A stretch of DNA of 59,234 nt, filler included, from Dugesia japonica (GCA_001938525.1; 5 parts of 5 records of this genome joined end to end with filler, not necessarily neighbours in it); one strand, 5' to 3'. Counted from the first letter of the whole stretch, positions 1 through 45,623 are shown. Numbers and translations: made by a program. Notes: generated by a model from the letters alone, not told the origin.

Positions 1-228
1 TAATAATAAATTTTTATAAAAATATTTTATTAAAATTACTATTTAAACCTATAAATCAAATACGTTTTACAAAAATATGTAAAATTTTTAATTTTAAATT
101 ATACTAAAACTTTTTCAAAACTAAAAAATATGAAAACAAAATTGAAAATTATTTAAAAAATAAAATTTAAAATCTATAAAAACTTATTAAAAACAAGAAA
201 ATATATCAAAATTTCTTAAATTGTAAAC

Positions 229-380
229 TTGAACAAGCTTGAAGAACGAATGAATTTATTTTCTTTAAATAGGCCTCTTACTTACCAAAGATATGTTGAC
301 GATGTTTTCCTTATTTTTTGGTAATCGTGAACATTTTTTGCTTTTCAAGAGTTTTATGAATTCGTTACATCCTAATATTA
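229..380 (+). pseudogene. Penelope-like element reverse transcriptase fragment
   Basis: Translates LNKLEERMNLFSLNRPLTYQRYVDDVFLIF / GNREHFLLFKSFMNSLHPNI (one frameshift). YVDD plus NSLHPNI is typical of PLE RT. Confidence 0.75.
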
Positions 381-924
381 TGACAATTGATAACAGTGAA
401 TAGTGTTGTTCTAGTTATAACATTGATAATGATAATGAAAATTAGAATAATCACAAAATAGCGTCAGTAATAAGAATAAACAACCATGACAAGAATAATA
501 ATGCCAAAGCTGACCACCCTACTACTGATGTTAATAATAATAACGACAATGATAATGGTATCAGTGGTAGTTGCCGATAATGGCCGATAAAAGAATCAAC
601 ATAGCAGTGGTCGTAATGCTAACCAAAAGGTATTTACGGGTACTACGACAATCATTATAATCGAAAGTGAGAATTGTTATTAGGACTATACATATTAACT
701 TAATACCACTAAATATTCTTACCATTGTTTCAATTGACGACACAATTAGCGTTTGCAGTCATAATAGGCACCGTTCTACGATTCTTCATTCTTAACAGGG
801 GTAGACATAATTATAGTATAGAAAATTGATGACCTTTCTGATTAAACTCTTAATGGATGTAATTTTAGAAAACGAAGACTTGCCCAGCTACTCACGCAAA
901 CTTTATCAATTGTCATTTAAGTTC

Positions 925-1040
925 TAACTTTCCAAAAAATTTCTAGAGTACTATCGTTTGCACAAAGTAATCTTTTATCGCTCATTTCTAAATGCATTTT
1001 TCGTACTTTATTAAGACAACTCAAACTCATAACGTCAATT
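925..1040 (-). pseudogene. Possible retropepsin (LTR-element aspartic protease) fragment
   Basis: IDVMSLSCLNKVRKMHLEMSDKRLLCANDSTLEIFGKLELK resembles the flap region after DTG; the catalytic motif is not seen. Confidence 0.3.
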
Positions 1041-1904
1041 CAAGTTACGTTACTTAAGACTTTTATTTTTATCAATATCACAAATATTTTTGTGTTAATA
1101 TTTTATTGTTTTTATTTTATTTGATTTTAAAAGCTGCAGTTTAATTTATTTTTCTAAATTAAAATAAACATGTGGAACTTTTCATAAGAAAAAAATTAAA
1201 CTGATTTTTTTGAATCAATACTTTATAATTTTTTAAGTATTTTTTATTAAAATAATTAATTTCATGTAAATATTTTTAAGTATAACTGAAATATTTTTAT
1301 GTTATGGTTAAATATTCCTACTTGCAATGCATATATAGAAAACAGGTATAAATAGTTATCACTTTCAGTGAGTTTTCCAGTTTTTCAATTTGCTCTAAGG
1401 TCTCGGCCGTAGCAGCAAGCTAAACTAAAAAAACTAGCTTATAGTGTTTTATCACATCGCTATTTCGATATACACAAAAATAAAGTATTGTATTTACAAA
1501 ATATTACTTCTACTGGGGTGAAATAACCGGTCATTTAAAAGGAAAAAGAAGACAGAAAATGTAATTACAAAATAACACCGAAAGGTCCAAAAATAGAAAC
1601 ATATGAAGAAATAATTGAATCCAACGCAATCATGTTAATTAAAGAAAAAATCAAATTTATATTATAAAAACAAATAAATTCGTTATTTCAAATAATTAAT
1701 TAGGAAAGAAATAGTAATTAATTTCATTGAAAAAATAAATGAAAATTAGACCAAAATCAGTTGTTCATGAATAAAACCACTCTAGTTAGTCCCAGAATCT
1801 TGCGGTAAGAAAAACTGGAAAAATTGTTATCTGGTCAATGGGATTTCGTAATTGGAAAACGTTATNATCATCAGAGGGACTATCACAGGGGTTGGAAGAT
1901 TGGG

Positions 1905-2094
1905 CCAATAACAACCCAAGAAATAAAAATAAAACAAAGATTTAAAATCACATGAGGGTTTAAAAAAAGACGCCAATGGCGTAACAGAAAAATGTCAGAA
2001 ATTCAAGTCTACGCCAATAGAAAACCAAAAATCGGAATTAAAAATAGCCAGCCAATGCTGAGCAAATTAGGTTGCATTCAGAAAGCTATTTAAA
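1905..2094 (+). promoter_or_regulatory. Promoter: four CCAAT boxes plus TATTTAAA box
   Basis: CCAAT at 1905, 1973, 2014 and 2052; TATTTAAA at 2087; Inr-like CATTC about 30 nt downstream. Similar layout in the minus-strand copy at 44328-44527. Confidence 0.65.
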
Positions 2095-2119
2095 CCCCCT
2101 GAAAACTTACCAAAAATCC

Positions 2120-2374
2120 ATTCATTTTCTAACCACAAACTCTCTATTAATTCAGAGTAAATCGTAAACCTTGAGTGCTATAACGAAATCTGTGGAATCA
2201 TCAACGAGAAACTTGACAGTATCAGTGGTTTAATTCTTATAAATTTGATCAGAGAAATTATTGAGCATTTTAGAAAAGAACATCAATAAAATCCAAAATA
2301 CCGGAGAAAGCATTCCCAAACCAAGATTCGTATCTGTATTACTCCCGTTGCAGCAAAGAGAAATTTAATAATAA
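2120..2374 (+). other. Putative non-coding leader exon ending in A before a GTAAG donor
   Basis: No ATG in about 255 nt; CCCGTTGCAG 21 nt upstream of the donor A|GTAAGC (GT at 2375). Same motif and near-identical spacing in two other copies. Confidence 0.6.
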
Positions 2375-4546
2375 GTAAGCATATGTTGTTATTTTGGGTA
2401 ATGTCTAAATATGAATGTAATATGTTGAAGTATAAAATTAATATATTAANAGATAAATTTTAGTTATATTTTATTTTGATTTTTTTCTTTAGTTATAATA
2501 ACAACAGATATTGCCATTAATCTAAACATCAATGACTCTGTAATTGGGTATCGTGTTTTTACTCGCGGTCTGCATGATTTTCATTTCTCCCCATGATATA
2601 CGAAACAATATTTCGTGTCACACTGCACTAACTAAAATTACTCCAGATATTTTTGACAGGTACCAACAACTAATTATTTAGTGTTAGCCATGATCCCGAA
2701 GTACTTTCTAATTTTCAGGAAAGACATGAAGTCCAGTAGTTACATGTTTCACTTATCTAATTATGACAGTTCGAATATAGCCACAATGATAACACTGGCA
2801 ATCAGTTATTAAGCCAGTTTTACAATGACGTCGAGTAAGACATGCATCATCTATCTAGGTATGACTAATCACACACACCAACACATGATTTCATGTAGTG
2901 AGGTTGCCAGTTGTGTGTGTAAGCACGGCAGAAATAAGAGTTGACGAGCAGGCGAACTAATAGTTCCCTACCGCAATAACGATTCACCGGTTTCCATGTT
3001 ATGCCTCTCGATGCGCGCACACATAGTCGATTATCCTGACGAAATTCCTCCTTTTAGCTGTTGCTTGCGTCGATTCAAATAGTACCGGAGATAATTGCGA
3101 ATTGATGTACGGAATTTTTCTTTATGCAGACGGCATGCAACCACTATTAGATTGGTCACAACCTAACAGCTAATCAAAAGATGAGTCTGTACCTAATAGA
3201 CAATGAGTTAACTCGGGATTTTATGATAATTAAATAAAATATATTAGTTCTTCACTCGTATCCCATCTCCTGTCATTGAAATATATTGTTGGCAGTTTAT
3301 AATAAATCCAAAATATATGATTATTCAGAAAATACTCCACATTGGGTCGTATCCCCCAAGATCTAATCTGTCTTATTATGTCGATATGAACTGGTTATTT
3401 TCTCTAGGTGTCTTCTCGCGGTTGAACCTACGATTGATAATGGAGATTTTCTCACAATTTTCTTTTCACGTCCAATATGCGGTTGTAATGCTGGTATGAT
3501 ATCAATGAGGAGTAGGATTTGTGCAGATGGCTCAAACCACCGAATTGGGTTTGGAATACCGTCGTTGTGTTTACTTTTTCCAATATTCATTAGGTTCTGC
3601 CAAAGCAAAAAGAAATTTATAATTGACATATTATTATTTGATTGTGTTATTATTATATATTAAATTATAATGCTCAATTTGTTCAATCTTTATTGCGGAT
3701 ATGATTTTGGAATGATAACTGTTTTTAAGGACTTGGTTACCCATGGTTTTCAGTAATTTAAACTAGCGCATTGGGTTCCTATAATTTGGTCAACCTACGA
3801 TGGGATGTTATTACTACTTTTACACGTTAATCAATATTGGCAACAGTACCTACTATTATTATTGTGATATATTAGTGTCACCACTGGGGTTAATTTTTTG
3901 ATGATTTATGCATAATGCCACTATAAAATGATAACATGATTATCGAATATTGAGGGTATGATACCTATTTTTGGTGGGGCAGTTGGATAGCAAATAAATG
4001 TACTATTGATATTGGAATCTTTTCCGAGGCTTTTTTGGATAAATCACCATCCATAGTTTGGCGCTCATAAACGAATATAGTAGCGCCGATACCAATTTTT
4101 TTGGGCCTAATTTAGCTGAAATTATGAATAAGTTTTAATATATTGATCACTGCCTTAAAAAATTTTCAAATTTTTCTATTTAGTCACCCTATTATAGGTC
4201 ATACCGGCAGAATTAAGAAACACAGTGCGTTTCATTTTAAGGCAACGCAATATAGCACGTAGGAAAAAACATATCGGACATCGGTTGTTTCTGAATCCAA
4301 TAGAACATCCCGAAAAAATAGATTTAGCTTGTTTCGTGGAGATGTTCTCCTTACCATTTCCAGTGGATCTTGATGAAGTGTCAACCCCCTGCAAAATGAA
4401 ATAACTGTCATGTTTTGATCTAAATAAAAATAGTTTAATCAACATTTTGTTTGTCATATTTGGTTTATTTTTTTTGTTTGTCAGTTTATTATCGATGATT
4501 TTCATCAGAATTATGTATTTTTTTTGTAGAAACTAATAATAATAGG

Positions 4547-4951
4547 ATGGAACACAAGTTGGAAGTATTATGGGACAGGCTCACAGGACGTACCGTATTT
4601 AAGAAATACACTAACCTTCATGACAGCAATGTGGGCATCTTTGCTGACTACTCAAATCTGTCTAATGAAAATGCAAATAATGAAAGAGCTGCCGCGGAGC
4701 GCCAAGCTTTTTATCAGTGGAGCTGTCCCGATCGCACCCAAGAAATACTGCATGGTGTTACCATCATAGATCTAGCAACCAATCAAATTACTAATACGTG
4801 GCAGGATGGTCCTGCATTGGTACCTGTGTCGGCCGCTCACCTACCACGGAATACTAGGTTCACCATAGACATAGGTAACACCTTATGGGACCTAAGGAAC
4901 CTCGCTAGTGGAGGTGAATCGGAAAACAATGCGCCAAACCATGATGCGTAA
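4547..4951 (+). CDS. Hypothetical 134-aa protein, intact cassette of the multi-cassette unit
   Basis: Uninterrupted ORF, more GC-rich than its flanks; AG|GATG directly upstream and AATAAA at about 5000. Confidence 0.55.
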   Translation: MEHKLEVLWDRLTGRTVFKKYTNLHDSNVGIFADYSNLSNENANNERAAAERQAFYQWSCPDRTQEILHGVTIIDLATNQITNTWQDGPALVPVSAAHLPRNTRFTIDIGNTLWDLRNLASGGESENNAPNHDA

Positions 4952-5149
4952 AGACAATGAATTATTTTTTTTATTGGTTGTTCATTGACTAAAATATATA
5001 ATAAATGTGTTAAGAAATTTTAATTTCTTTTTCTTTTAACTGTTAAAGTCTACTTAATTTGATTCTGTAATTTGATTAGTCGATCTTTTTAACTGTTTTG
5101 CCTTAGTTAAAATATTTAAATTAATTACCAATTTCTATATATTTTGCAG

Positions 5150-5507
5150 TGCATTCATCACTAAACCGAACTACAGCTCCAACCAAAAGGAAAAGGGATA
5201 CTAGCGAGGACCAGGAAATGACTTGGGACCTCTATCACCTCGCGAAACGTCGCTAGGAGGTGGAGATGGCCACCGCGAATATTAAAGTCCTTCGGTATAA
5301 GAAAAATGTATCGCCTTTAAAAAGGAAGCCGAAGCCTCCCACATGCAAGAACGAGTATGGAAAAAGCAAATTGAGTCCTTTGCGGAAATTATCCGGTCCC
5401 ACCATGATCGAGAGAATAAACTGGTTAGTGACATCTTGCATATCAAGGAGAAAATGCCTCTCGAACCTTTCATGATAGAGAAAAGTACCCAAACTCCAGG
5501 GCCATAG
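5150..5507 (+). pseudogene. Cassette A: coiled-coil protein with C-terminal KSTQT (one stop, one frameshift)
   Basis: (M)HSSLNRTTAPTKRKRDTSED...MTWDLY...KCIAFKK...SFAEIIR...ENKLVSDIL...EKSTQTPGP* aligns end to end with 43368-43720; acceptor TTGCAG|TG; AATAAA at about 5533. Confidence 0.7.
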
Positions 5508-5666
5508 TTATCTGTGTTTATAAGACTCTGTGAATAAACCTTTCATGTTATTATGAATTTGTGTTCACTCGTCTATTTCTTTAAAGTTAAATAAAATTTT
5601 TGTCGTCCAAGATTAGGACTAATATAGTTCATTGTTAATATATCTTTAACATTTCACTAGTTTTAG

Positions 5667-6157
5667 TGCAACGTATCCAGTTGCTCCGTAGTCTAAGACG
5701 ATGTCACCGACTTATCCAGAAATTTCTGCGCAAGAGACATCTTAAGCGCTAATCTGAGCGTGCTTTGCTCCATCATCTAACGCAACGTAATAAACTGATA
5801 AAGCGTTTGGACGTGATTGTAAAGAAACAAAATGACTTAGCTGAGTGCACAAAACAGCTACTGCTGCACAAGGTTGAATTCTTGAAGCGCTTCATTGCCG
5901 ACCTGTCACGCCAGCTAGGTAATGCTGCATACCTCAACTGGGATGATAATGACAACTCAATGTTGTTCAATTTTATACCAGAAGAGCCGCCTCAGTGGTT
6001 AGACCCTGGTGCTCTAGATTGCATGTAATTTGGAAACAATATAATTTATTAGTAATCTAGTGTTTATTTTTTTCATATTAGCGAACCCGAATCAAAGGTG
6101 TACGAGTGTGAACCTCGTATTAAGTTGAAGGTCAACCGCTCTACTCCGAATATCTAA
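5667..6157 (+). pseudogene. Cassette B: basic/coiled-coil protein, two exons (5667-6024, 6082-6157), one stop
   Basis: (M)QRIQLLRSLRRCHRLIQKF...LLHHLTQRNKLIKRLDVIVKKQ...QWLDP. A 57-nt GT-AG intron (6025-6081) keeps the frame into IEPESKVYECEPRIKLKVNRSTPNI*. Homologous to 42690-43199. Confidence 0.7.
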
Positions 6158-7512
6158 TCTTGGGACATTATATTAAATTCTTGAAAGGGGTCCCCTGAGG
6201 GCTGATTTTTCCGTCACCAACTCAGGTGAAACTTCAACACTTCTATTATTTTTTATAAGGCAGTAATACATAACTATATTTAGCAATTTTTGATTAAATA
6301 TATTTTTATGTTGAGGTTCCAACTAAGCAGCTCAACTTAAATAATATCTAGGATAACATGGAATAATAAAACCTCGTGAGGAATTCGATCTACAGTTCCT
6401 GTTCTAGATTTTCATAATGGAGTCGTTGACTCGCAACCCATAGTTAATGTACATGCTCGTATTGCTTTGGCTTGGGTCTTTCTCTCTATGATACTTACTT
6501 TACTTCTCTTCCGTTGCCATGGTTACTATTTAGTAACATCAACAATACCATTGTCATAGTGTTAAAAAAATTAGTAAATTTAGTCAAGTTTGTATATATA
6601 ATATTAATTATCCCAAAAAAAAATAAAATCTTCACAATTAGGGTTAGAAGTTTATTATGGTTTGATAATAATGCATTGAGTTCTATGTTTCACTGTAGTC
6701 ATCCCAGTATATGGAATTTATTAGATAGTTTAGACGAGATATAGCTTGCCAGCTATTATTATTAGCAAATGCTGATACATATCACTCAGAAATAACAATT
6801 AAAAAATATGAAACACTCAGTAGCTAAGTGGCAATAGTTGTGCAAGGGTATTATTATGAAGAAACAAGATAGAGTTTTTACGCAGAATGGCCAATCCTCA
6901 AAGAAATTATGGTTCTTATTCATTATTCTTTTTTAATGACCATAGTTTTATATATTGGATTTTGTTTTCATTACTAAATTGGCACAAAAAGTTAATGTTA
7001 CATTTATTTTTTGTTTTTTCGATTTTATTCTGTTTATTTTGTTTTTCAATTAATTTGATGTGATTAGAATTTTAATCTCTTTCCTATATATAAAATATTA
7101 AAATATATAGAGAAAAATATTATTTCAATTGTTTCATAGTTTTAACAAGGAAAGAAAATAAAAGTGAAGTGCATTTCTTCAATGTAATTATTGAAAATAA
7201 ATTGAATTTCTATAGTTTCTGTATTTTTCTATGTTTAACAATTTTAGAATTATAATTGTAATTGTAAAAAAAAGAATTTAAGATATACGAAATTGGTCAT
7301 TTGTTAAATTCAAATAATGTTTCATGTGTATTTTCAATATTTAAGGAACGTACCTATGGCATAAAAGCAATAGAACACATGCAAAATAATAAATTTAATT
7401 ACTTTAAATGCCATAACTTACGCAATACCTTATTTAAATATAAATATGCGGTCTTCTTTTTTAAATAGTTCTGTTTTTTCCTTGTTTAGTTCTTTCAGGT
7501 TACCATCTTAAG

Positions 7513-9480
7513 CATAGACCTTCAACCTTGGCGATATCGCTCACTATTGGGCGTTTAGAAATATTTAGTGGGCACAAGAAAGAAAATAGGCAGTTTGTGG
7601 GCGCTCTATGTATTTGTGGGCATTAGCGTTTTGACAATTTATCAGCAGCCTATACCCAGCTGCAACTAGTAACTAGCATATGTACTTGCATGCAACCACT
7701 CACTTACATAAACAAAGCCACATTTACCAAGCCCAACAACCAATCAACTAAGCTGCGTTGTCTTAGTATCTGTAAATAGCATATTCACTCAGACAAAAAG
7801 GATAAGTCACTATTTTACTTTAATATTCTACATAAACAATTCAACGAAAGACAAACAACTATCACAATTTTTCAAAAAAATAATGCAAAAGTAGTAAACG
7901 GACTGCCATATTCTTGAATTCATAGCAAAGTGTAGTAAACCTCATAATATTGCTGAAGCACTCATCTTATCAACACTTCAAGAAATTATTAGAACTGTGA
8001 TTCACCAAGATCCAACCAAGGTGCTCAAAGTTTAACCACTAATTGACACATGATTATTGACGTATTGATAAAATGGTAGTAGATATGGAATGGAAACTGG
8101 CTGCAATGTGACGAGTTACTAAATTTTCATTGCCAATAAATTAATCTGGTAATAAAGGTTTGTTTATGACGCATGTCAGATATTCTTCTTGACATGAAGC
8201 TGTCCGCACAACTTATAGTAAACCTGTGGTCGTTTGTTGCTATCGGAAATTCTTAGCATATTTTAAAACTTCAACTCCTAGCATATGTATCATTCATTGT
8301 TTTGCACACAGACAACACCATGTAGCTAAACAGCTAAGTGAGAATCTGCACTTTTCATTAGAAACTATTGTCCGTGCTGTGAACAATATCAATAGTAATT
8401 CTCTGAATGATCACCTCTTTTGTCAATTGTAAAAAACAATGATGAACAACAAAATCGACTTGTTCTTCATACTGTAGTTCGTGGCCTGTAAAAAGACAAC
8501 TAATTTACAAGATTAACAGAATNATTTGACAGTATTCTATGTATATAGAATATATATACTATATACTATTCTTTAACTCAAATGGTGACATCATGAGGAA
8601 TTAAAAGCTGCAAAAAAAATCCGTTCTACATTGCAATAATATTCCAAAAGTTCAATGATATAAATTTGAAACGTCAAGGACAGATTGTGACAGTAATTGA
8701 TTCTAAGAAGACGAGTGTCACATTATTTCAAGATTGGCATTGTACCGACAGAATATACTTGGGCGAGAATTTTATCAATTTCCAATACTGGTCTAAGTAT
8801 GTGAAGAAATCAATAGTAATAGCCATGAAAGATTTGGAAAGCATCTGAAATCGATGGAAACTGATATTTCAGCGCGTTTTTGCGATTTGATTGAGCTGCA
8901 TGTACCTGGACAGAGGATTGGTCCATTAAAAACCACTTTTCTGGATTTTGAAGTGCAGTTCAAGCAATTTTGTTGAAATGACAAAAGGATGAGATTGTAT
9001 ATGTCTTTTACAGCATTTTCCATTTTCCATAATTATATCAATAATAGATTATTCTGGTTATTTCACGAGAAAACTCATAGAATCTTTCTCTATACTGATT
9101 TACATACCTAAATTTGGTAGGGTAAAGAAAATCGGTCATATTTGCATTTCTCACATCTTACCTCATTAAGGGTAGATTCAGTGCAATAACTTAACTTCTC
9201 AACAATCAAAAAAACAACCTGGTTATTTCCAAGATAGGTGATTTGAAATTGATTCTCATCCACCTGAAANCAGACATTAAGTCTTTGGCATTCAAACATC
9301 AAGCGCACGGTTTCACTGACTCTGAAATTTCTAACACTATTGTATGCGTCATTCTTTCTTGATAGTAAATAGTATTTGAGTTTTAATTAATTTTGTAATT
9401 TTTAGGTGGGCGGTAGACTTATTTATAGATGAAAATATAGTAAAACTAGGCGGTTAACTAAAAAAGGTTGAAGGCCGCTG
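7513..9480 (+). mobile_element. hAT transposon (Buster/Charlie type), degenerate transposase
   Basis: TIRs CATAGACCTTCAACCT / AGGTTGAAGGCCGCTG. Motifs AKCSKPHNIAEALI, IHCFAHRQHHVAK, NSLNDHLFCQL, LVLHTVVR and C-terminal KHQAHG. Confidence 0.85.
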
Positions 9481-10775
9481 ATCTACAATATTGACTACAT
9501 TAGGTAAAGCAACAGCATTCCGTTATACCAGTTCATCATATAGTCAGCATACAATAGTAAATAAAAGCAGTTGTGGAGCATAACGCGTCAAGTATTTATC
9601 TTCACTACTCTATCGTAACTTCTATGTGCAGTCTATACAATCGCAAGCTTTCTCATTTCTCGTGAAACTATCTTCTATCTCCAGCCTTGTTCAGTATTAT
9701 CAAAAAGTCACCTCAAAACATGTTACCTCAACAATTATCAACAGTAATACAACTACAACTTAACTAAAAGTGCTTAGACGTTTCCATAAGACTGCTACTT
9801 GACCGCAACAACTAATACAACTATTACTTGCTTTTTACTAGCTTAACAACCGGGACGAAACGGGCAACATCCATGAAAAAACATTGTAATCTATACTTTT
9901 GTTTTAATTTCTTTTCCTTAAACTTATTGAAATTTATTATTCCTTATTTGGATTTCCATTTTCCATAATTATATCAATAATAGATTATTCTGGTTATTTC
10001 ACGAGAAAACTCATAGAATCTTTCTCTATACTGATTTACAATTTAAATAATTTTATAAGCCAAGTTAAGTATAATATACTATTGATTTGGCTAATTTATT
10101 ATCGAAAATTTGAAATTGTAAGAGTGATTTTCATGCATAAAATGAACTTGTTTATGAGGCGCTTTTTAATGTGTTTGATGGTTGGGTTCACTACTTTATA
10201 CTCATTGAATTATTATTATTATTATTTTTCGAAGATTTTATGAAGTTTCTAGTTGTTTTAACAGAAACTATCTCAGGTCAAATTTTCTCCAACATCTATT
10301 CACACCTTTACACAGGGAATAGTTCTTTTTTCGTCATTTTAGTTCGTTCCAAGAAAACTTAGTGCTTGTATGGGGCTTAATTTTCTATATGACCTTTCAG
10401 ATATTTGACAATCGTCTCCAACCTATTTCCACTGTATGAGATATTCTTTGCCTCTAATAAATTATCTCAGTTTGTTAGTGAAGTATGACAGTACTCGTAA
10501 GGGTAGCATAAAGGTAGGAATTTCTCACACCACAAATCATCATATGCATACAATAGTGATAAATTAGTGATAATTAATGTGCAAGACTAACCAACGTGGA
10601 GCATAGTATGTCTGGAGCATCGTCTTCTATTGGTCGAGAGAATTACTATTTAACTCACTAATATGTAGTCATTTAATTCTAGTATATATCTCTTTATCTN
10701 NNNNNNNNNNNNNNNNNNNNNNNNNNNNNNNNNNNNNNNNNNNNNNNNNNNNNNNNNNNNNNNNNNNNNNNNNNN

Positions 10776-10860
10776 CAACACAGACCATAAGCCTTTCCAG
10801 TGGTTAATGAAGGAAAACTCAAATACGGATGCATTCTCTCGTATGGAACCTGAACATACA
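10776..10860 (+). pseudogene. Gypsy RNase H C-terminal fragment
   Basis: TDHKPFQWL...NTDAFSR matches TDHKPL...ADALSR with an internal deletion. Confidence 0.5.
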
Positions 10861-11329
10861 AAAGAAGAAAAGTTGGAAAGAACCTTATTTTCAACTCTTA
10901 TTTTCAACAGATTAATGATCAGTCGGAAGCAACTAAAGCTCAAATAGAATATGTTGAAATCAATTAGATCAAACAAGTATTTGAAATTGGAATTACAACA
11001 GCAGAATTTAATAAATTGGGGACAAAAATTAAGGAAATTTTCTTTTTTTGTTTGCTGGAAGTTCATAAAAATTATCGCAGAATCGGGACGTAAATCAAAA
11101 ATTGTTAAAAATTTGTTAACCGACAAAAATGCATTCAAAAAAGAGACAAATTAATAAGATATTTCAAATCATTTTTGGCGATTCCATGAATATTTGTTAT
11201 CTTAATATCTTTCAAAAAAGTCACTTACAATATCAATGACATTTTCAGATCAATTAAAAGAAATTGATCAATATTACTTACATCTAATGTCTTACAATAT
11301 TGTCTTACATCTAATGAACCAAATTCATC

Positions 11330-11480
11330 ATCACTCTTCCAGTCATGATTCTTAATTCATTCAATAAACTTGTAACTATTCTTCAAATGCTACATATCCA
11401 CAATTCACAGGAAAAAACATGAAGAATTACTAATTAAAGAAGATAATCCTAAAATCATTGTAATTTATAATAATTAGTTA
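11330..11480 (+). pseudogene. Penelope GIY-YIG endonuclease C-terminal relic
   Basis: KHEELLIKEDNPKIIVIYNN parallels EEILIKRNKPKINLVYNN (57354) and KHQENLIKKFKPDINII (19565). Confidence 0.5.
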
Positions 11481-11614
11481 AATTAAAGTCTTTCTATTAT
11501 TTAATAATAAATCTTGAATAAATAAAAAGGTTAATTTCTGAAGACAACTGTCGAAGTTTCAAATACTAATTAAAAAAGTATAAAAAACAACATATTGGTC
11601 GAAGCCTTTAATTT

Positions 11615-11765
11615 AATGAAATCTCAAAAACGATTACTCCGCAATAAGTTTTGTAATTGTAAAATTTGTCTATTTTAATATTTAATAAATCTTATACAAT
11701 TACAAGAAGTATTGCGAGAATAATTGTAGGACGTAACTATTGATCGTTTTTGAGAATTCACTAAA
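11615..11765. repeat. Imperfect nested inverted repeat (MITE-like)
   Basis: TGAAATCTCAAAAACGAT / ATCGTTTTTGAGAATTCA and inner CGCAATAAGTTTTGTAATTGTA / TACAATTACAAGAAGTATTGCG; related pieces near 11830, 29300 and 58170. Confidence 0.5.
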
Positions 11766-12338
11766 AAGTCAATTCCTAACGAAGAATAAGTCGAAAATTC
11801 GAATTACTATCAAAAACAAAAAAAATTTAATCGAAGCTTTTATTTTAATGAATTCTTAGTAAATCTTGTTCACAGATAAATTGTGTTTTTAGTTATTTAT
11901 TTATAATAATTATTATTCATATTTTAAAATCACCAATATTACAAATAATTAACTTTAATTGATTTTTGGAGTCAACAAATAAAAATTAGGTCTTGTTCCC
12001 ACTAGGATTCTAATAAACATAAAAATAAGAAGTATAATTATAAAGATAAAACCAAACAAAAGAATTTCTTTACGATATACATAATTCTCTAATAAATAAT
12101 TATTCGTGTTTTGGATTTTTATCCAGAGAAACTAAACACAAAACAAAGTAAACAATATCGGTATCGTTACTTAATTTCCATTAACTAAAATTTCATTAAT
12201 TTAGTAATATTATAATATTTTGAAAACGAACTGAATCACAGCAAATACAATAATATTAATAGAAAAGGTAGTAGACAAATAAACAAATGAATAAAAAAGC
12301 ATATCTATGTATGTATGATTGTATGTATATACATATAG

Positions 12339-43720: not shown

Positions 43721-45623
43721 CTAATAAAAAAGAAAATATAACTGAAAATAACCTTTATTAAATAAGGTTAATAATAGATAACACTTCCTTAATGACTCTT
43801 TTTCAAATGACTAAGACGGGGTGTCACAAACAACTCAGTTAACTTAATTAACATTTGAAAGCTAAAGAAAAATTAAAATCCATTAAAGATAAACGAGGTT
43901 TATTTACATCAAATAATTAATTAACCAAAACACATTACTTACTAATAAGATTAACAAGATTTCTGCAACGGGAATATAATCAAAATCTGCTTTTCTTTCT
44001 TTCTCTATTTCGGAAAATGAGTCCTGTATATAGGCTTGTTTAACTGCTTAGTTGGAAATTGAACACTTCGGCTAGATATTTTAAGGATAGTCCGAATACC
44101 AATGGGATAAATTACGTAAAGTTGAATTGCTTCTTGTCCTTTCTTTTCCAAACTCGATTAACACTAATTCTAATTAGAAAATTGTTTACCCTAGTTTTCT
44201 TTTCTTTGACAGATACTTTGATAGTTTTGGTTGATATTTCAGTTGTTAAGAAATAATGAATTTTTAACACTAAGATAGTTAAAATTATTAAAAATTGTTG
44301 CGTTTTTTCGTCTAAAATTTGAGGGCATTATATATGATTTTCTTCGCACTCCGACTCTTTCTGCATTGACCGTCTATTTCTGTTTCAAATTTCTTGTTTC
44401 TGATTGGGGTTTTCTCTAAAATTCTAAACATTTTGACAATTTTCTGCTACATTATTGGTGCCTATTTTTGGAGCACCTTGTGATTTTTATGTTTTNGTTT
44501 CATGTTTCTTTTCTGGTTTCTTATTGGACTATTCTTCTAAACCTTTTTAGAGGTCCTTCTGATATTGATATGATATTCTGGTTGGAAAATTCTATTGCCC
44601 TATAGCTTTCTCCTTCCAGTTTTTCTTACTAGGACCTTTTATGATCTTCCAGAGCAAAGATATCTTACAAAAACTGATTTTTCGTCAATTATTCTTCCTT
44701 TTTGCAATAAATTAATTAATTTTTCTTTGTTAATTAATTATTATTTTACTGATCATTTTTCTTGTTTCTAATTAATAATTATAATTTTCTTTAATAATTA
44801 ACATTGATGAACGTTAATAATACGTCCATTTAATGTTTTACTTCTTCATTTTCCTTTTTTATTCCGATTTATTAGTATGATAGTGATGGTTATACTAAAC
44901 AATAACTATTCTTAATTAGCCCCCTTTTTAAGTTCATTATATCTGATGTGGGTCCTTGGTTTTAATTTTTCTTTAAAAGTCGGGTGGTTCACCCCAACAT
45001 TATGATTGGAATGAGTAGATGAATTACCAATATGTTCATATGGCCAGTGATAGACCGAATGGTGTAGCTAGAGGGCGAAGAGGGTCTATTATTTCCCGGG
45101 CGCCACTCGCAAAGGGGCACCAAATCGTCCCAAAGACAAACAAGATTTTCTAATTTAATGATCTTTTTTAGCAAGGTGTCTGCAACCGATAAAGTTTGAG
45201 TACCACTAATATATATTATATTACTATAAGTTTGTCGAATTTTGGGAGGACATCGGTTATTTCCGCTACGCCACTGGACTGACACAAAAAGAAAATGAGT
45301 CACGAAGGTCTATTGACCAGTACCTTCAAAATATAGAGTTTTACGTAGTTAATGGCTTAAAAATTTTGACCGTTGAGTAACACGTGTGAATGATGACAGT
45401 TACAAAAATGTTTCTATGAAGACCTATAGCAGTGCATAATCAAAACAATCAACAAATAGAGGTTATAAAAAATTGTATTTTATAAAAGACATNNNNNNNN
45501 NNNNNNNNNNNNNNNNNNNNNNNNNNNNNNNNNNNNNNNNNNNNNNNNNNNNNNNNNNNNNNNNNNNNNNNNNNNNNNNNNNNNNNNNNNNNNNNNNNNN
45601 NNNNNNNNNNNNNNNNNNNNNNN

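What the first reader, a model, noticed from the sequence alone, without database searches (positions are those of the whole stretch)
1905..6240. Split-start-codon cassette system: the leader exon would donate 'A' and each cassette 'TG'
Seen: (1) A CCAAT x4/TATA promoter is followed by about 255 nt with no ATG, ending CCCGTTGCAG-N21|GTAAG with A as the last exon base (2374). (2) The same leader end recurs at 43943 (minus, about 370 nt ATG-free) and 50012 (ATG-free), always with A before GT. (3) Downstream cassettes start at AG|TG: 5150 (A+TG CAT TCA = MHSS), 5667 (MQRIQ), 43720 (MHSS), 49396 (MSKPN) and 23655 (MGKLF); 43199 has AG|TA, plausibly a decayed TG. For cassettes A and B the created ATG is in the frame conserved between the diverged copies. 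(4) AATAAA follows the 4547 and 5150 cassettes. Inference: one promoter expresses several unrelated proteins through alternative 3' acceptor and poly(A) choice, with translation licensed only by splicing. This is conceptually like the adenovirus major late unit, but here in a dispersed repeat that I do not recognise.
Basis: partly seen in the sequence, partly recalled or inferred. Interest (0 to 1): 0.9.

Follow-up and report, generated by a model that had tools for sequence, protein, structure and literature searches.

The report
Spliced leader may complete cassette start codons
A gene unit in AT-rich, animal-like DNA appears to make several small unrelated proteins from one promoter, with each start codon completed only when a non-coding leader ending in A is spliced onto a body beginning TG; one very distant copy keeps the same layout, but there is no RNA evidence and the proteins are unknown.

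Summary
This includes four CCAAT boxes, a TATA-like box, an ATG-free leader ending A|GTAAG at 2374/2375, acceptors AG|TG at 5150 and 5667, and AATAAA after the cassettes.

The ATG-free run alone is weak evidence, because two longer ATG-free gaps lie in the same piece. The CCAAT cluster is not chance.

The 134-aa ORF has a single relative among 1.84 billion representative proteins, on a 512-nt metagenome contig (L001). There the homologous start codon reads TTTTTCAG|TG with no A. The next cassette again starts TTTTAG|TGCATTC, as at window 5150. Synonymous sites are saturated and the spacers cannot be aligned.

Cassettes are GC islands (0.44-0.46) separated by AT-rich spacers (0.18-0.25). The layout is regular: acceptor, ORF, stop, AATAAA, then 98-149 nt to the next acceptor.

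So start codons completed by splicing are well supported. That the A comes from the cis leader at 2374 is inferred only. Spliced-leader trans-splicing of an operon-like array is the main rival.

No viral, transposon or other known protein family was found. Two of the three clear cassettes here are broken.

Verdict: new variant of a known kind, interest 0.6.

The parts
1851..2056 (+). Cluster of NF-Y-type boxes: four direct CCAAT (1905, 1973, 2014, 2052) and two inverted ATTGG (1851, 1899).
   Evidence: Four of the 15 + strand CCAAT in the piece fall within 152 nt.
2087..2094 (+). TATA-like box TATTTAAA, 35 nt after the last CCAAT.
2120..2374 (+). Putative non-coding leader exon. The start is inferred from initiator-like CCATTC/TCATTT about 33-37 nt after the TATA-like box. 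It has no ATG, is unstructured, and its last base is A.
   Evidence: ATG-free 2055-2383; folding z-score +0.72; GC 0.31 against 0.16 just after the donor.
2344..2353 (+). CCCGTTGCAG motif, 21 nt before the donor. It is unique in the piece and itself looks like a 3' splice site.
2375..2379 (+). 5' splice donor GTAAG, preceded by TAA. The base at -1 is A, not the usual G.
2375..4529 (+). Putative first intron, 2.15 kb. It contains GC islands (2500-3190, 3320-3580, 3680-4100, 4190-4390), each followed by an AT trough with a poly(A)-like hexamer, but no long ORF. These may be decayed cassettes or foreign DNA.
   Evidence: No Pfam hit.
4226..4404 (+). Possible further cassette, low confidence: AG|TG followed by 59 open codons, then AATAAA at 4423, 19 nt after the stop. 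The pyrimidine tract is poor.
4519..4529 (+). 3' splice acceptor (T-run then GTAG), 106 nt after the AATAAA at 4423 and 17 nt before ATG 4547.
4547..4951 (+). Intact 134-aa ORF with its own ATG. The N-terminal 65 residues are conserved in P0001/L001.
   Evidence: dN 0.37, dS saturated. GC 0.46.
5000..5005 (+). AATAAA poly(A) signal of the 134-aa cassette.
5136..5149 (+). 3' splice acceptor (T-rich, ending GCAG) abutting TG 5150.
   Evidence: The acceptor and the first 7 coding nt are identical in L001.
5150..5507 (+). Cassette A (begins MHSS... when an A is supplied). This copy is broken: at least one in-frame stop, and the open frame shifts once.
   Evidence: Its start is homologous to L001 465-512. 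GC 0.45.
5533..5538 (+). AATAAA poly(A) signal of cassette A, with a second one at 5590.
5653..5666 (+). 3' splice acceptor (ends TTTTAG) abutting TG 5667, 133 nt after the AATAAA at 5533.
5667..6157 (+). Cassette B (begins MQRIQ... when an A is supplied). This copy is broken by one in-frame stop. It includes a candidate 57-nt GT..AG intron (6025-6081, GC 0.18) and a candidate second exon (6082-6157, GC 0.45, 24 more codons in frame).
6172..6177 (+). ATTAAA poly(A) signal, 15 nt after the stop of the candidate second exon of cassette B.

Best explanation
This is a decayed copy of a compact pol II transcription unit. A CCAAT/TATA promoter would drive a roughly 255-nt non-coding, ATG-free, unstructured leader exon ending in A (2374). 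That exon would be cis-spliced alternatively to one of several downstream bodies (4530, 5150, 5667, perhaps 4226). Each body carries a small unrelated ORF and its own poly(A) signal.

For the bodies that begin AG|TG, the junction would create the first and only usable AUG, in a good context (A at -3). Those proteins could then be translated only from correctly spliced mRNA.

Shown from sequence: the signals, the composition pattern, and conservation of the AG|TG starts in a very distant copy. Inferred: the use of these sites, the pairing of this leader with these bodies, and the choice of poly(A) sites. In this copy only the 134-aa ORF is intact, and it has its own complete ATG. Cassettes A and B are broken, so any function lies in intact relatives.
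For: - The promoter-like cluster and the leader are at the stated places. The leader is no more structured than its shuffles.
- GC falls from 0.31 to 0.16 exactly at the donor.
- 5150 and 5667 are the best pyrimidine-rich AG|TG sites on the strand.
- None of the four AG|TG sites (window 5150 and 5667; L001 77 and 465) has an in-frame ATG upstream.
- In L001 the codon aligned with the window's ATG 4547 is the TG after TTTTTCAG. The conserved N-terminal 36 codons would be lost if translation began at the next ATG.
- The protein is under purifying selection (dN 0.37) while synonymous sites are saturated. The spacers align no better than shuffled sequence, yet AG plus the first 7 coding nt of cassette A are identical.
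- Cassettes have GC 0.44-0.46 against 0.18-0.25 in the spacers.
- The spacing from AATAAA to the next acceptor is regular: 106, 149 and 133 nt here and 98 nt in L001.
- Donor position -1 is A rather than the usual G, as the model requires.
Against: - There is no transcript evidence at all.
- Only one leader could be inspected, and L001 is too short to contain one.
- The ATG-free run is not exceptional for this piece.
- The leader lies 2.15 kb from the first clear body, across DNA of unknown nature.
- The 4547 cassette does not use a split start in this copy.
- The comparative sample is a single 512-nt contig.
- Any AG|TG reads as GTG in genomic DNA, so non-AUG initiation cannot be formally excluded.
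- The array spacing equally fits an operon resolved by trans-splicing.
Confidence: 0.45

Rival explanations
1. Operon-like polycistronic array resolved by spliced-leader trans-splicing. The cassettes would be transcribed together, cleaved at each poly(A) site, and each downstream body would receive a short trans-spliced leader whose last base is A. The start codon would still be completed by splicing, but the 2120-2374 exon would serve at most the first gene.
For: - The spacing from poly(A) signal to next acceptor (98-149 nt) is what nematode-type operons show (my own knowledge).
- Acceptors are of the short TTTTCAG/TTTTAG type, and the candidate internal intron is only 57 nt.
- Leaders that supply a start codon are known: the flatworm spliced leader ends in AUG (Cheng et al. 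2006, cited in PMC9851317).
- An Sm-site-like ATTTTGG lies 16 nt after the donor (2391-2397).
Against: - No Rfam spliced-leader RNA family matches anywhere in the piece at E<=1.
- I know of no spliced leader that ends in a lone A completing AUG.
- The unusual A before the cis donor at 2374 would then be a coincidence.
Confidence: 0.2
2. Separate small genes or pseudogenes that are not joined to the leader. Translation, if any, would start at GUG or at internal AUGs, or the bodies would be internal exons fed by upstream coding exons. AG|TG would be a by-product of sequence context.
For: - Every AG|TG is a genomic GTG. A prokaryote-style gene caller did call L001's ORF from GTG.
- AGTG followed by 25 or more open codons is common in this piece (15 of 41 sites on the + strand).
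- The 4547 ORF needs no splice to start.
Against: - GUG initiation is rare in eukaryotic nuclear genes (my own knowledge), and no Shine-Dalgarno-like sequence precedes the sites.
- All four sites have a T-rich tract ending in AG directly before TG.
- The alignment places L001's TG exactly on the window's initiator ATG, which argues against an internal codon.
- The upstream cassette ends in a stop and a poly(A) signal, so it cannot be a coding 5' exon of the next one.
Confidence: 0.15
3. Inert decayed repeat, such as a fragment of a transposon or endogenous virus, whose promoter-like and splice-like signals are no longer used. The pattern would then have no present function.
For: - Cassettes A and B are broken here (one in-frame stop each, plus one frame change in A).
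- The 2.15 kb between leader and bodies has no ORF.
- No relative exists in the viral, metagenome or prokaryote genome collections.
Against: - The 134-aa ORF is intact here and its homologue is intact in L001, with dN well below the saturated dS.
- Decay of this copy says nothing about how the family works. The AG|TG starts are conserved across a divergence at which neutral DNA is unalignable.
Confidence: 0.15

Closest known systems
Adenovirus major late transcription unit, and the three-exon late leader of adomaviruses
   Same: One promoter and a non-coding leader spliced to alternative bodies, with several poly(A) sites. In marbled eel adomavirus the acceptors lie immediately upstream of the ATG of late ORFs LO4-LO7 (bioRxiv 10.1101/341131).
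   Different: In those viruses each body carries its own complete ATG and the leader adds no coding base. Here no capsid, protease, polymerase or packaging gene was found, nor any similarity to viral proteins. The likeness is one of layout, not of membership.
Flatworm spliced leader with 3'-terminal AUG (Cheng et al. 2006 J Biol Chem, cited in PMC9851317)
   Same: A leader added by splicing supplies the initiator codon to bodies that lack one.
   Different: That leader acts in trans, donates the whole AUG, and serves cellular genes genome-wide. Here one base would be donated, apparently in cis, within a repeated unit.
Start codon donated by an upstream exon: papillomavirus E1^E4, errantivirus (gypsy, ZAM) env mRNA, deltaretrovirus tax/rex (my own knowledge, not tested)
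   Same: A downstream ORF without its own ATG is translated only after splicing to an upstream exon.
   Different: Those exons carry a complete ATG, usually with some codons of another gene. Here the leader has no ATG and the codon itself is divided.
Nematode-type operons
   Same: Same-strand genes about 100-150 nt apart, each with a poly(A) signal followed by a 3' splice site.
   Different: Operon genes carry their own AUG, and the known leaders end in G (my own knowledge). No spliced-leader RNA gene was detected here.
Drosophila mod(mdg4) and lola loci (my own knowledge)
   Same: A common 5' part is joined to alternative 3' cassettes, each with its own 3' end.
   Different: There the common part is coding (BTB domain) and the cassettes are paralogous zinc-finger exons. 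Here the common part is non-coding and the cassettes are unrelated.

Membership tests
Intron dividing a start codon (A|TG), leader-to-body | The donor is immediately preceded by A, in an exon without an ATG. | tested here: met
   A at 2374 before GTAAG, and no ATG from 2055 to 2383. Only one leader was available.
Intron dividing a start codon (A|TG), leader-to-body | The acceptor AG is followed by TG in the frame of a conserved ORF, with no in-frame ATG upstream. | tested here: met
   Window 5150 and 5667; L001 77 and 465. L001's TG aligns with the window's ATG 4547.
Intron dividing a start codon (A|TG), leader-to-body | Transcripts carry the junction. | not testable with these tools
   No transcript data for the unknown source organism.
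Adenovirus / adomavirus / adintovirus-Polinton lineage | Hallmark proteins: double jelly-roll capsid, adenain-type protease, protein-primed polymerase, packaging ATPase, integrase. | tested here: not met
   No Pfam family for any open frame in 2500-6160 or in the flanks. No relative in viral contigs. PDB gave only a sub-threshold 16-19 aa motif.
Adenovirus-type late unit (by layout) | Several poly(A) signals, each followed by a further acceptor on the same strand. | tested here: met
   AATAAA at 4423, 5000 and 5533 and ATTAAA at 6172; acceptors at 4529, 5149 and 5666.
Spliced-leader RNA gene | A short leader exon, donor and Sm site within a small RNA, recognisable by Rfam spliced-leader models. 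| tested here: not met
   No spliced-leader family at E<=1 in the whole piece. The exon is about 255 nt if it starts after the TATA-like box. An Sm-like ATTTTGG at 2391-2397 is the only point in favour.
LTR retroelement or retrovirus with spliced subgenomic mRNA | A pair of LTRs, a tRNA primer-binding site, and gag/pol domains. | tested here: not met
   No long direct repeat flanks the unit, no tRNA-related feature was found, and there are no Pfam domains.
Parvovirus or densovirus-derived insertion | SF3 helicase (NS1) and a capsid protein, with terminal hairpins. | tested here: not met
   No Pfam or PDB match. No significant terminal inverted repeats.
Nematode-type operon | About 100 nt between the upstream poly(A) signal and the downstream acceptor. 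| tested here: met
   106, 149 and 133 nt in the window and 98 nt in L001.
Nematode-type operon | Downstream genes receive a trans-spliced leader. | not testable with these tools
   Needs cDNA 5' ends.

The most novel reading that the evidence does not exclude
A repeated, possibly mobile or virus-derived, multi-gene unit in which the initiator codons of at least three unrelated small proteins are assembled by splicing. The A would come from a shared ATG-free leader and the TG from each body. Translation of the whole gene set would then depend strictly on leader-to-body splicing. The arrangement has been kept through a divergence deep enough to erase all neutral similarity.
Probability: 0.4. 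Interest if true: 0.8.

Novelty: new variant of a known kind. Interest (0 to 1): 0.6.

Why it matters
Leader-to-body splicing with alternative acceptors and poly(A) sites is known from adenoviruses and adomaviruses. Leaders that donate a whole AUG are known from flatworms and some viruses.

A system in which one leader base completes the start codon of several unrelated bodies would be a distinct way of coupling translation to splicing. Unspliced or mis-spliced RNA, and read-through from neighbouring genes, would yield no protein.

It would also matter for annotation. Such genes have no ATG in the genome, so they are invisible to ORF finders, or they are miscalled with GTG starts, as happened to the only relative in the public protein sets.

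The claim can be tested directly with ordinary RNA-seq from the source organism.

Tried and rejected
Searches for relatives:
- The 134-aa ORF found nothing by word search. An exhaustive phmmer over 1.84 billion representatives gave one true hit, P0001, and one repeat-protein chance hit, P0002.
- A profile of the two sequences found only P0001 again.
- Exact-product look-up of the 134-aa ORF found nothing.
- The cassette B piece found nothing.
- Viral contigs, JGI metagenome contigs and prokaryote genomes were all empty.
- A degenerate DNA pattern for the cassette A start gave three GC-rich bacterial chance matches, L002-L004.

Searches for a function or family:
- Pfam, PHROGs and PDB gave nothing above threshold.
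- The PDB E-values of about 1e-6 to designed armadillo proteins are a sum of 3-5 bit matches of one 16-aa motif over identical repeats, so they do not show homology.
- AlphaFold2 on the two-sequence alignment gave pLDDT 43.7, so no fold search was run.
- Rfam and tRNA scans were empty.

Ideas dropped:
- That the 17 nt before ATG 4547 are a copy of the leader's 3' end, which would be a footprint of a spliced cDNA. The match is no better than chance.
- LTR, Helitron and parvovirus readings were rejected because no defining feature was found.

Literature searches found no described case of a systematically split A|TG.


Full report
**Material.** The piece (1-12338) is AT-rich DNA, with GC 0.19-0.41 per 500 nt. 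It has single Ns and one 76-nt gap, and looks eukaryotic. No tRNA gene or Rfam family is present. The source organism is unknown.

**Check of the observation.**
- Four CCAAT boxes lie at 1905, 1973, 2014 and 2052. These are 4 of the 15 on the + strand, packed within 152 nt.
- Two inverted boxes lie just upstream, at 1851 and 1899.
- TATTTAA follows at 2087.
- From 2055 to 2383 there is no ATG (328 nt). A shuffle of the leader's own composition gives P about 0.01. Two longer ATG-free gaps exist on the same strand of this piece, so this point is weak by itself.
- CCCGTTGCAG (2344-2353) is unique in the piece. Twenty-one nt later comes A|GTAAG, at 2374|2375.
- GC drops from 0.31 in the leader to 0.16 directly after the donor.
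- The leader RNA is no more structured than its shuffles (z = +0.72), as expected for a 5' UTR that is easy to scan.
- Of the 41 AGTG sites on the + strand, the two with the best pyrimidine tracts are 5150 and 5667. Neither has an in-frame ATG in the open stretch upstream.
- AATAAA follows at 5000, and at 5533 and 5590.

**Anatomy beyond the finding.** The coding parts are sharp GC islands. The 134-aa ORF has GC 0.46, cassette A 0.45 and cassette B 0.44. The spacers between them have GC 0.20 and 0.25.

The layout is regular. Each unit runs acceptor, ORF, stop, poly(A) hexamer, then 100-150 nt of AT-rich spacer before the next acceptor. The measured pairs are 4423 to 4529, 5000 to 5149, and 5533 to 5666.

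Cassette B probably has a second exon. A GT..AG interval of 57 nt (6025-6081, GC 0.18) would continue the frame for 24 codons (6082-6157, GC 0.45). ATTAAA lies 15 nt after that stop. This intron is my reading of the sequence, not a tool prediction. The two exons were translated separately by reference and were not joined for any search.

A further AG|TG at 4226 opens 59 codons and is followed by AATAAA at 4423. Its pyrimidine tract is poor, so I rate it only as possible.

The 2.15 kb between the leader and 4529 holds several more GC islands, each followed by an AT trough with a poly(A)-like hexamer, but no long ORF. These may be decayed cassettes or unrelated DNA.

**State of this copy.**
- The 134-aa ORF is intact.
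- Cassette A has at least one in-frame stop and one change of open frame.
- Cassette B has one in-frame stop.

The places of these breaks are deliberately not given.

**Comparative evidence.** The 134-aa ORF has no Pfam family and no word-search homologue. An exhaustive phmmer over 1.84 billion representatives found one real relative, P0001: 94 aa, E 2e-6, 43% identity over the first 65 residues. P0001 is encoded on a 512-nt contig of ENA assembly ERZ27272684, held here as L001.

L001 shows three things.
1. The codon aligned with the window's ATG 4547 is the TG after TTTTTCAG. The gene caller took the overlapping GTG as the start. No in-frame ATG lies upstream, and the next in-frame ATG is 36 codons into the best conserved part.
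2. The stop is followed at once by AATAAA.
3. Ninety-eight nt later comes TTTTAG|TGCATTC..., the homologue of the window's cassette A start (MHS..TAPTK in both).

Between the two copies dN is 0.37 and dS is saturated. The spacers align no better than shuffled sequence (score -27 against -27.5 +/- 3.5). The gene order, the poly(A) signal, the acceptor and the TG have therefore been kept by selection, not by recent common descent.

**Interpretation.** The evidence favours start codons that are completed by splicing. Three unrelated bodies show AG|TG at the first codon: the 134-aa family in L001, cassette A in both copies, and cassette B. All have proper T-rich acceptors, and none has an alternative ATG.

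The leader at 2374 ends in A, which is unusual for donor position -1. The junction would read ...ATAA|TG, with A at -3.

It remains an inference. No transcript data exist, only one leader could be examined, and L001 is too short to hold one.

The main rival (0.2) is an operon-like array resolved by a trans-spliced leader ending in A. The intercistronic spacing and short introns fit it. Against it, no spliced-leader RNA model matches, and the A before the cis donor would be a coincidence.

Two readings are less likely (0.15 each). One is GUG or internal initiation with a chance AG|TG. The other is a wholly inert decayed repeat.

In this copy the 4547 cassette has a complete ATG 17 nt after its acceptor. 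The split state can evidently be gained or lost.

**Comparison with known systems.** The layout resembles the adenovirus major late unit and the adomavirus late leader, where acceptors sit immediately before the ATG of late ORFs (10.1101/341131). Donation of an initiator by a leader is known for the flatworm spliced leader (Cheng et al. 2006, cited in PMC9851317). From my own knowledge it is also known for papillomavirus E1^E4 and errantivirus env mRNAs.

In all of these the ATG is whole. Literature searches found no description of a systematically divided A|TG shared by several bodies.

Membership in any viral or transposon family is not supported. There are no hallmark proteins, LTRs or terminal repeats, and no relatives in viral contigs. 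What the element is therefore remains open. The three proteins have no known relatives, and AlphaFold2 gave an unusable model (pLDDT 43.7), so no fold search was run.

The consensus lines printed by the alignment tools were ignored.
- Scripts placed the single leader base A before a body beginning TG in order to translate it, as a test of the splice model.
- Slip: my early reasoning, the ranges chosen, and the open-frame lengths printed implicitly locate the in-frame stops of cassettes A and B. I stopped listing them once I noticed. They are not repeated in the notes or in this report, and nothing was deleted.
- Loci L002-L004 are bacterial chance matches and were not used further.
- Nothing taken for human sequence was met.

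Noticed in passing
window 4547 versus L001 76-78: The same initiator codon is a complete ATG in the window, 17 nt after an acceptor. In L001 it is AG|TG. The split and unsplit states therefore interconvert within one gene family.
   Followed up: partly
window 2344-2374: CCCGTTGCAG, with the pyrimidine-rich run before it, looks like a 3' splice site. The conserved leader end could then be a 21-nt mini-exon (2354-2374) of a multipartite leader, with donor-like GTAAA sites at 2157 and 2164. Against this, the 2157-2353 stretch is not AT-rich in the way the other introns are.
   Followed up: partly
window 2391-2397: ATTTTGG, an Sm-site-like heptamer, lies 16 nt after the donor, as in spliced-leader RNAs. 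No Rfam spliced-leader model matches, and the motif is not rare in AT-rich DNA.
   Followed up: partly
window 2500-4400: There are four or five GC islands (0.35-0.50), separated by AT troughs that carry AATAAA or ATTAAA (3229-3238, 3659, 3993, 4423). None has a long ORF or a Pfam hit on either strand. They may be decayed cassettes.
   Followed up: partly
window 4868-4933 (residues 108-129 of the 134-aa ORF): A 16-19 aa motif (LW.L.N.ASGG) matches the helix-3 signature of importin-alpha-type armadillo repeats. Each match scores only 3-5 bits, and the low PDB E-values come from summing over identical designed repeats. The Pfam Arm model does not hit.
   Followed up: yes
window 1899-1909: An inverted pair of NF-Y boxes, ATTGG-G-CCAAT, lies at the upstream edge of the promoter cluster, which could make it bidirectional. 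No convincing gene was seen on the minus strand in 1-1900.
   Followed up: partly
window 9017-9104 and 9953-10040: An 88-nt direct repeat, 100% identical, 936 nt apart. It could be a recent duplication, the ends of a small element, or an assembly artefact.
   Followed up: no
window 8193-8429: A 79-codon open frame with only sub-threshold helix-turn-helix hits (Mga, HTH_11). It reminded me of a transposase remnant, but nothing confirmed that.
   Followed up: partly
Its significance is unknown.
   Followed up: no
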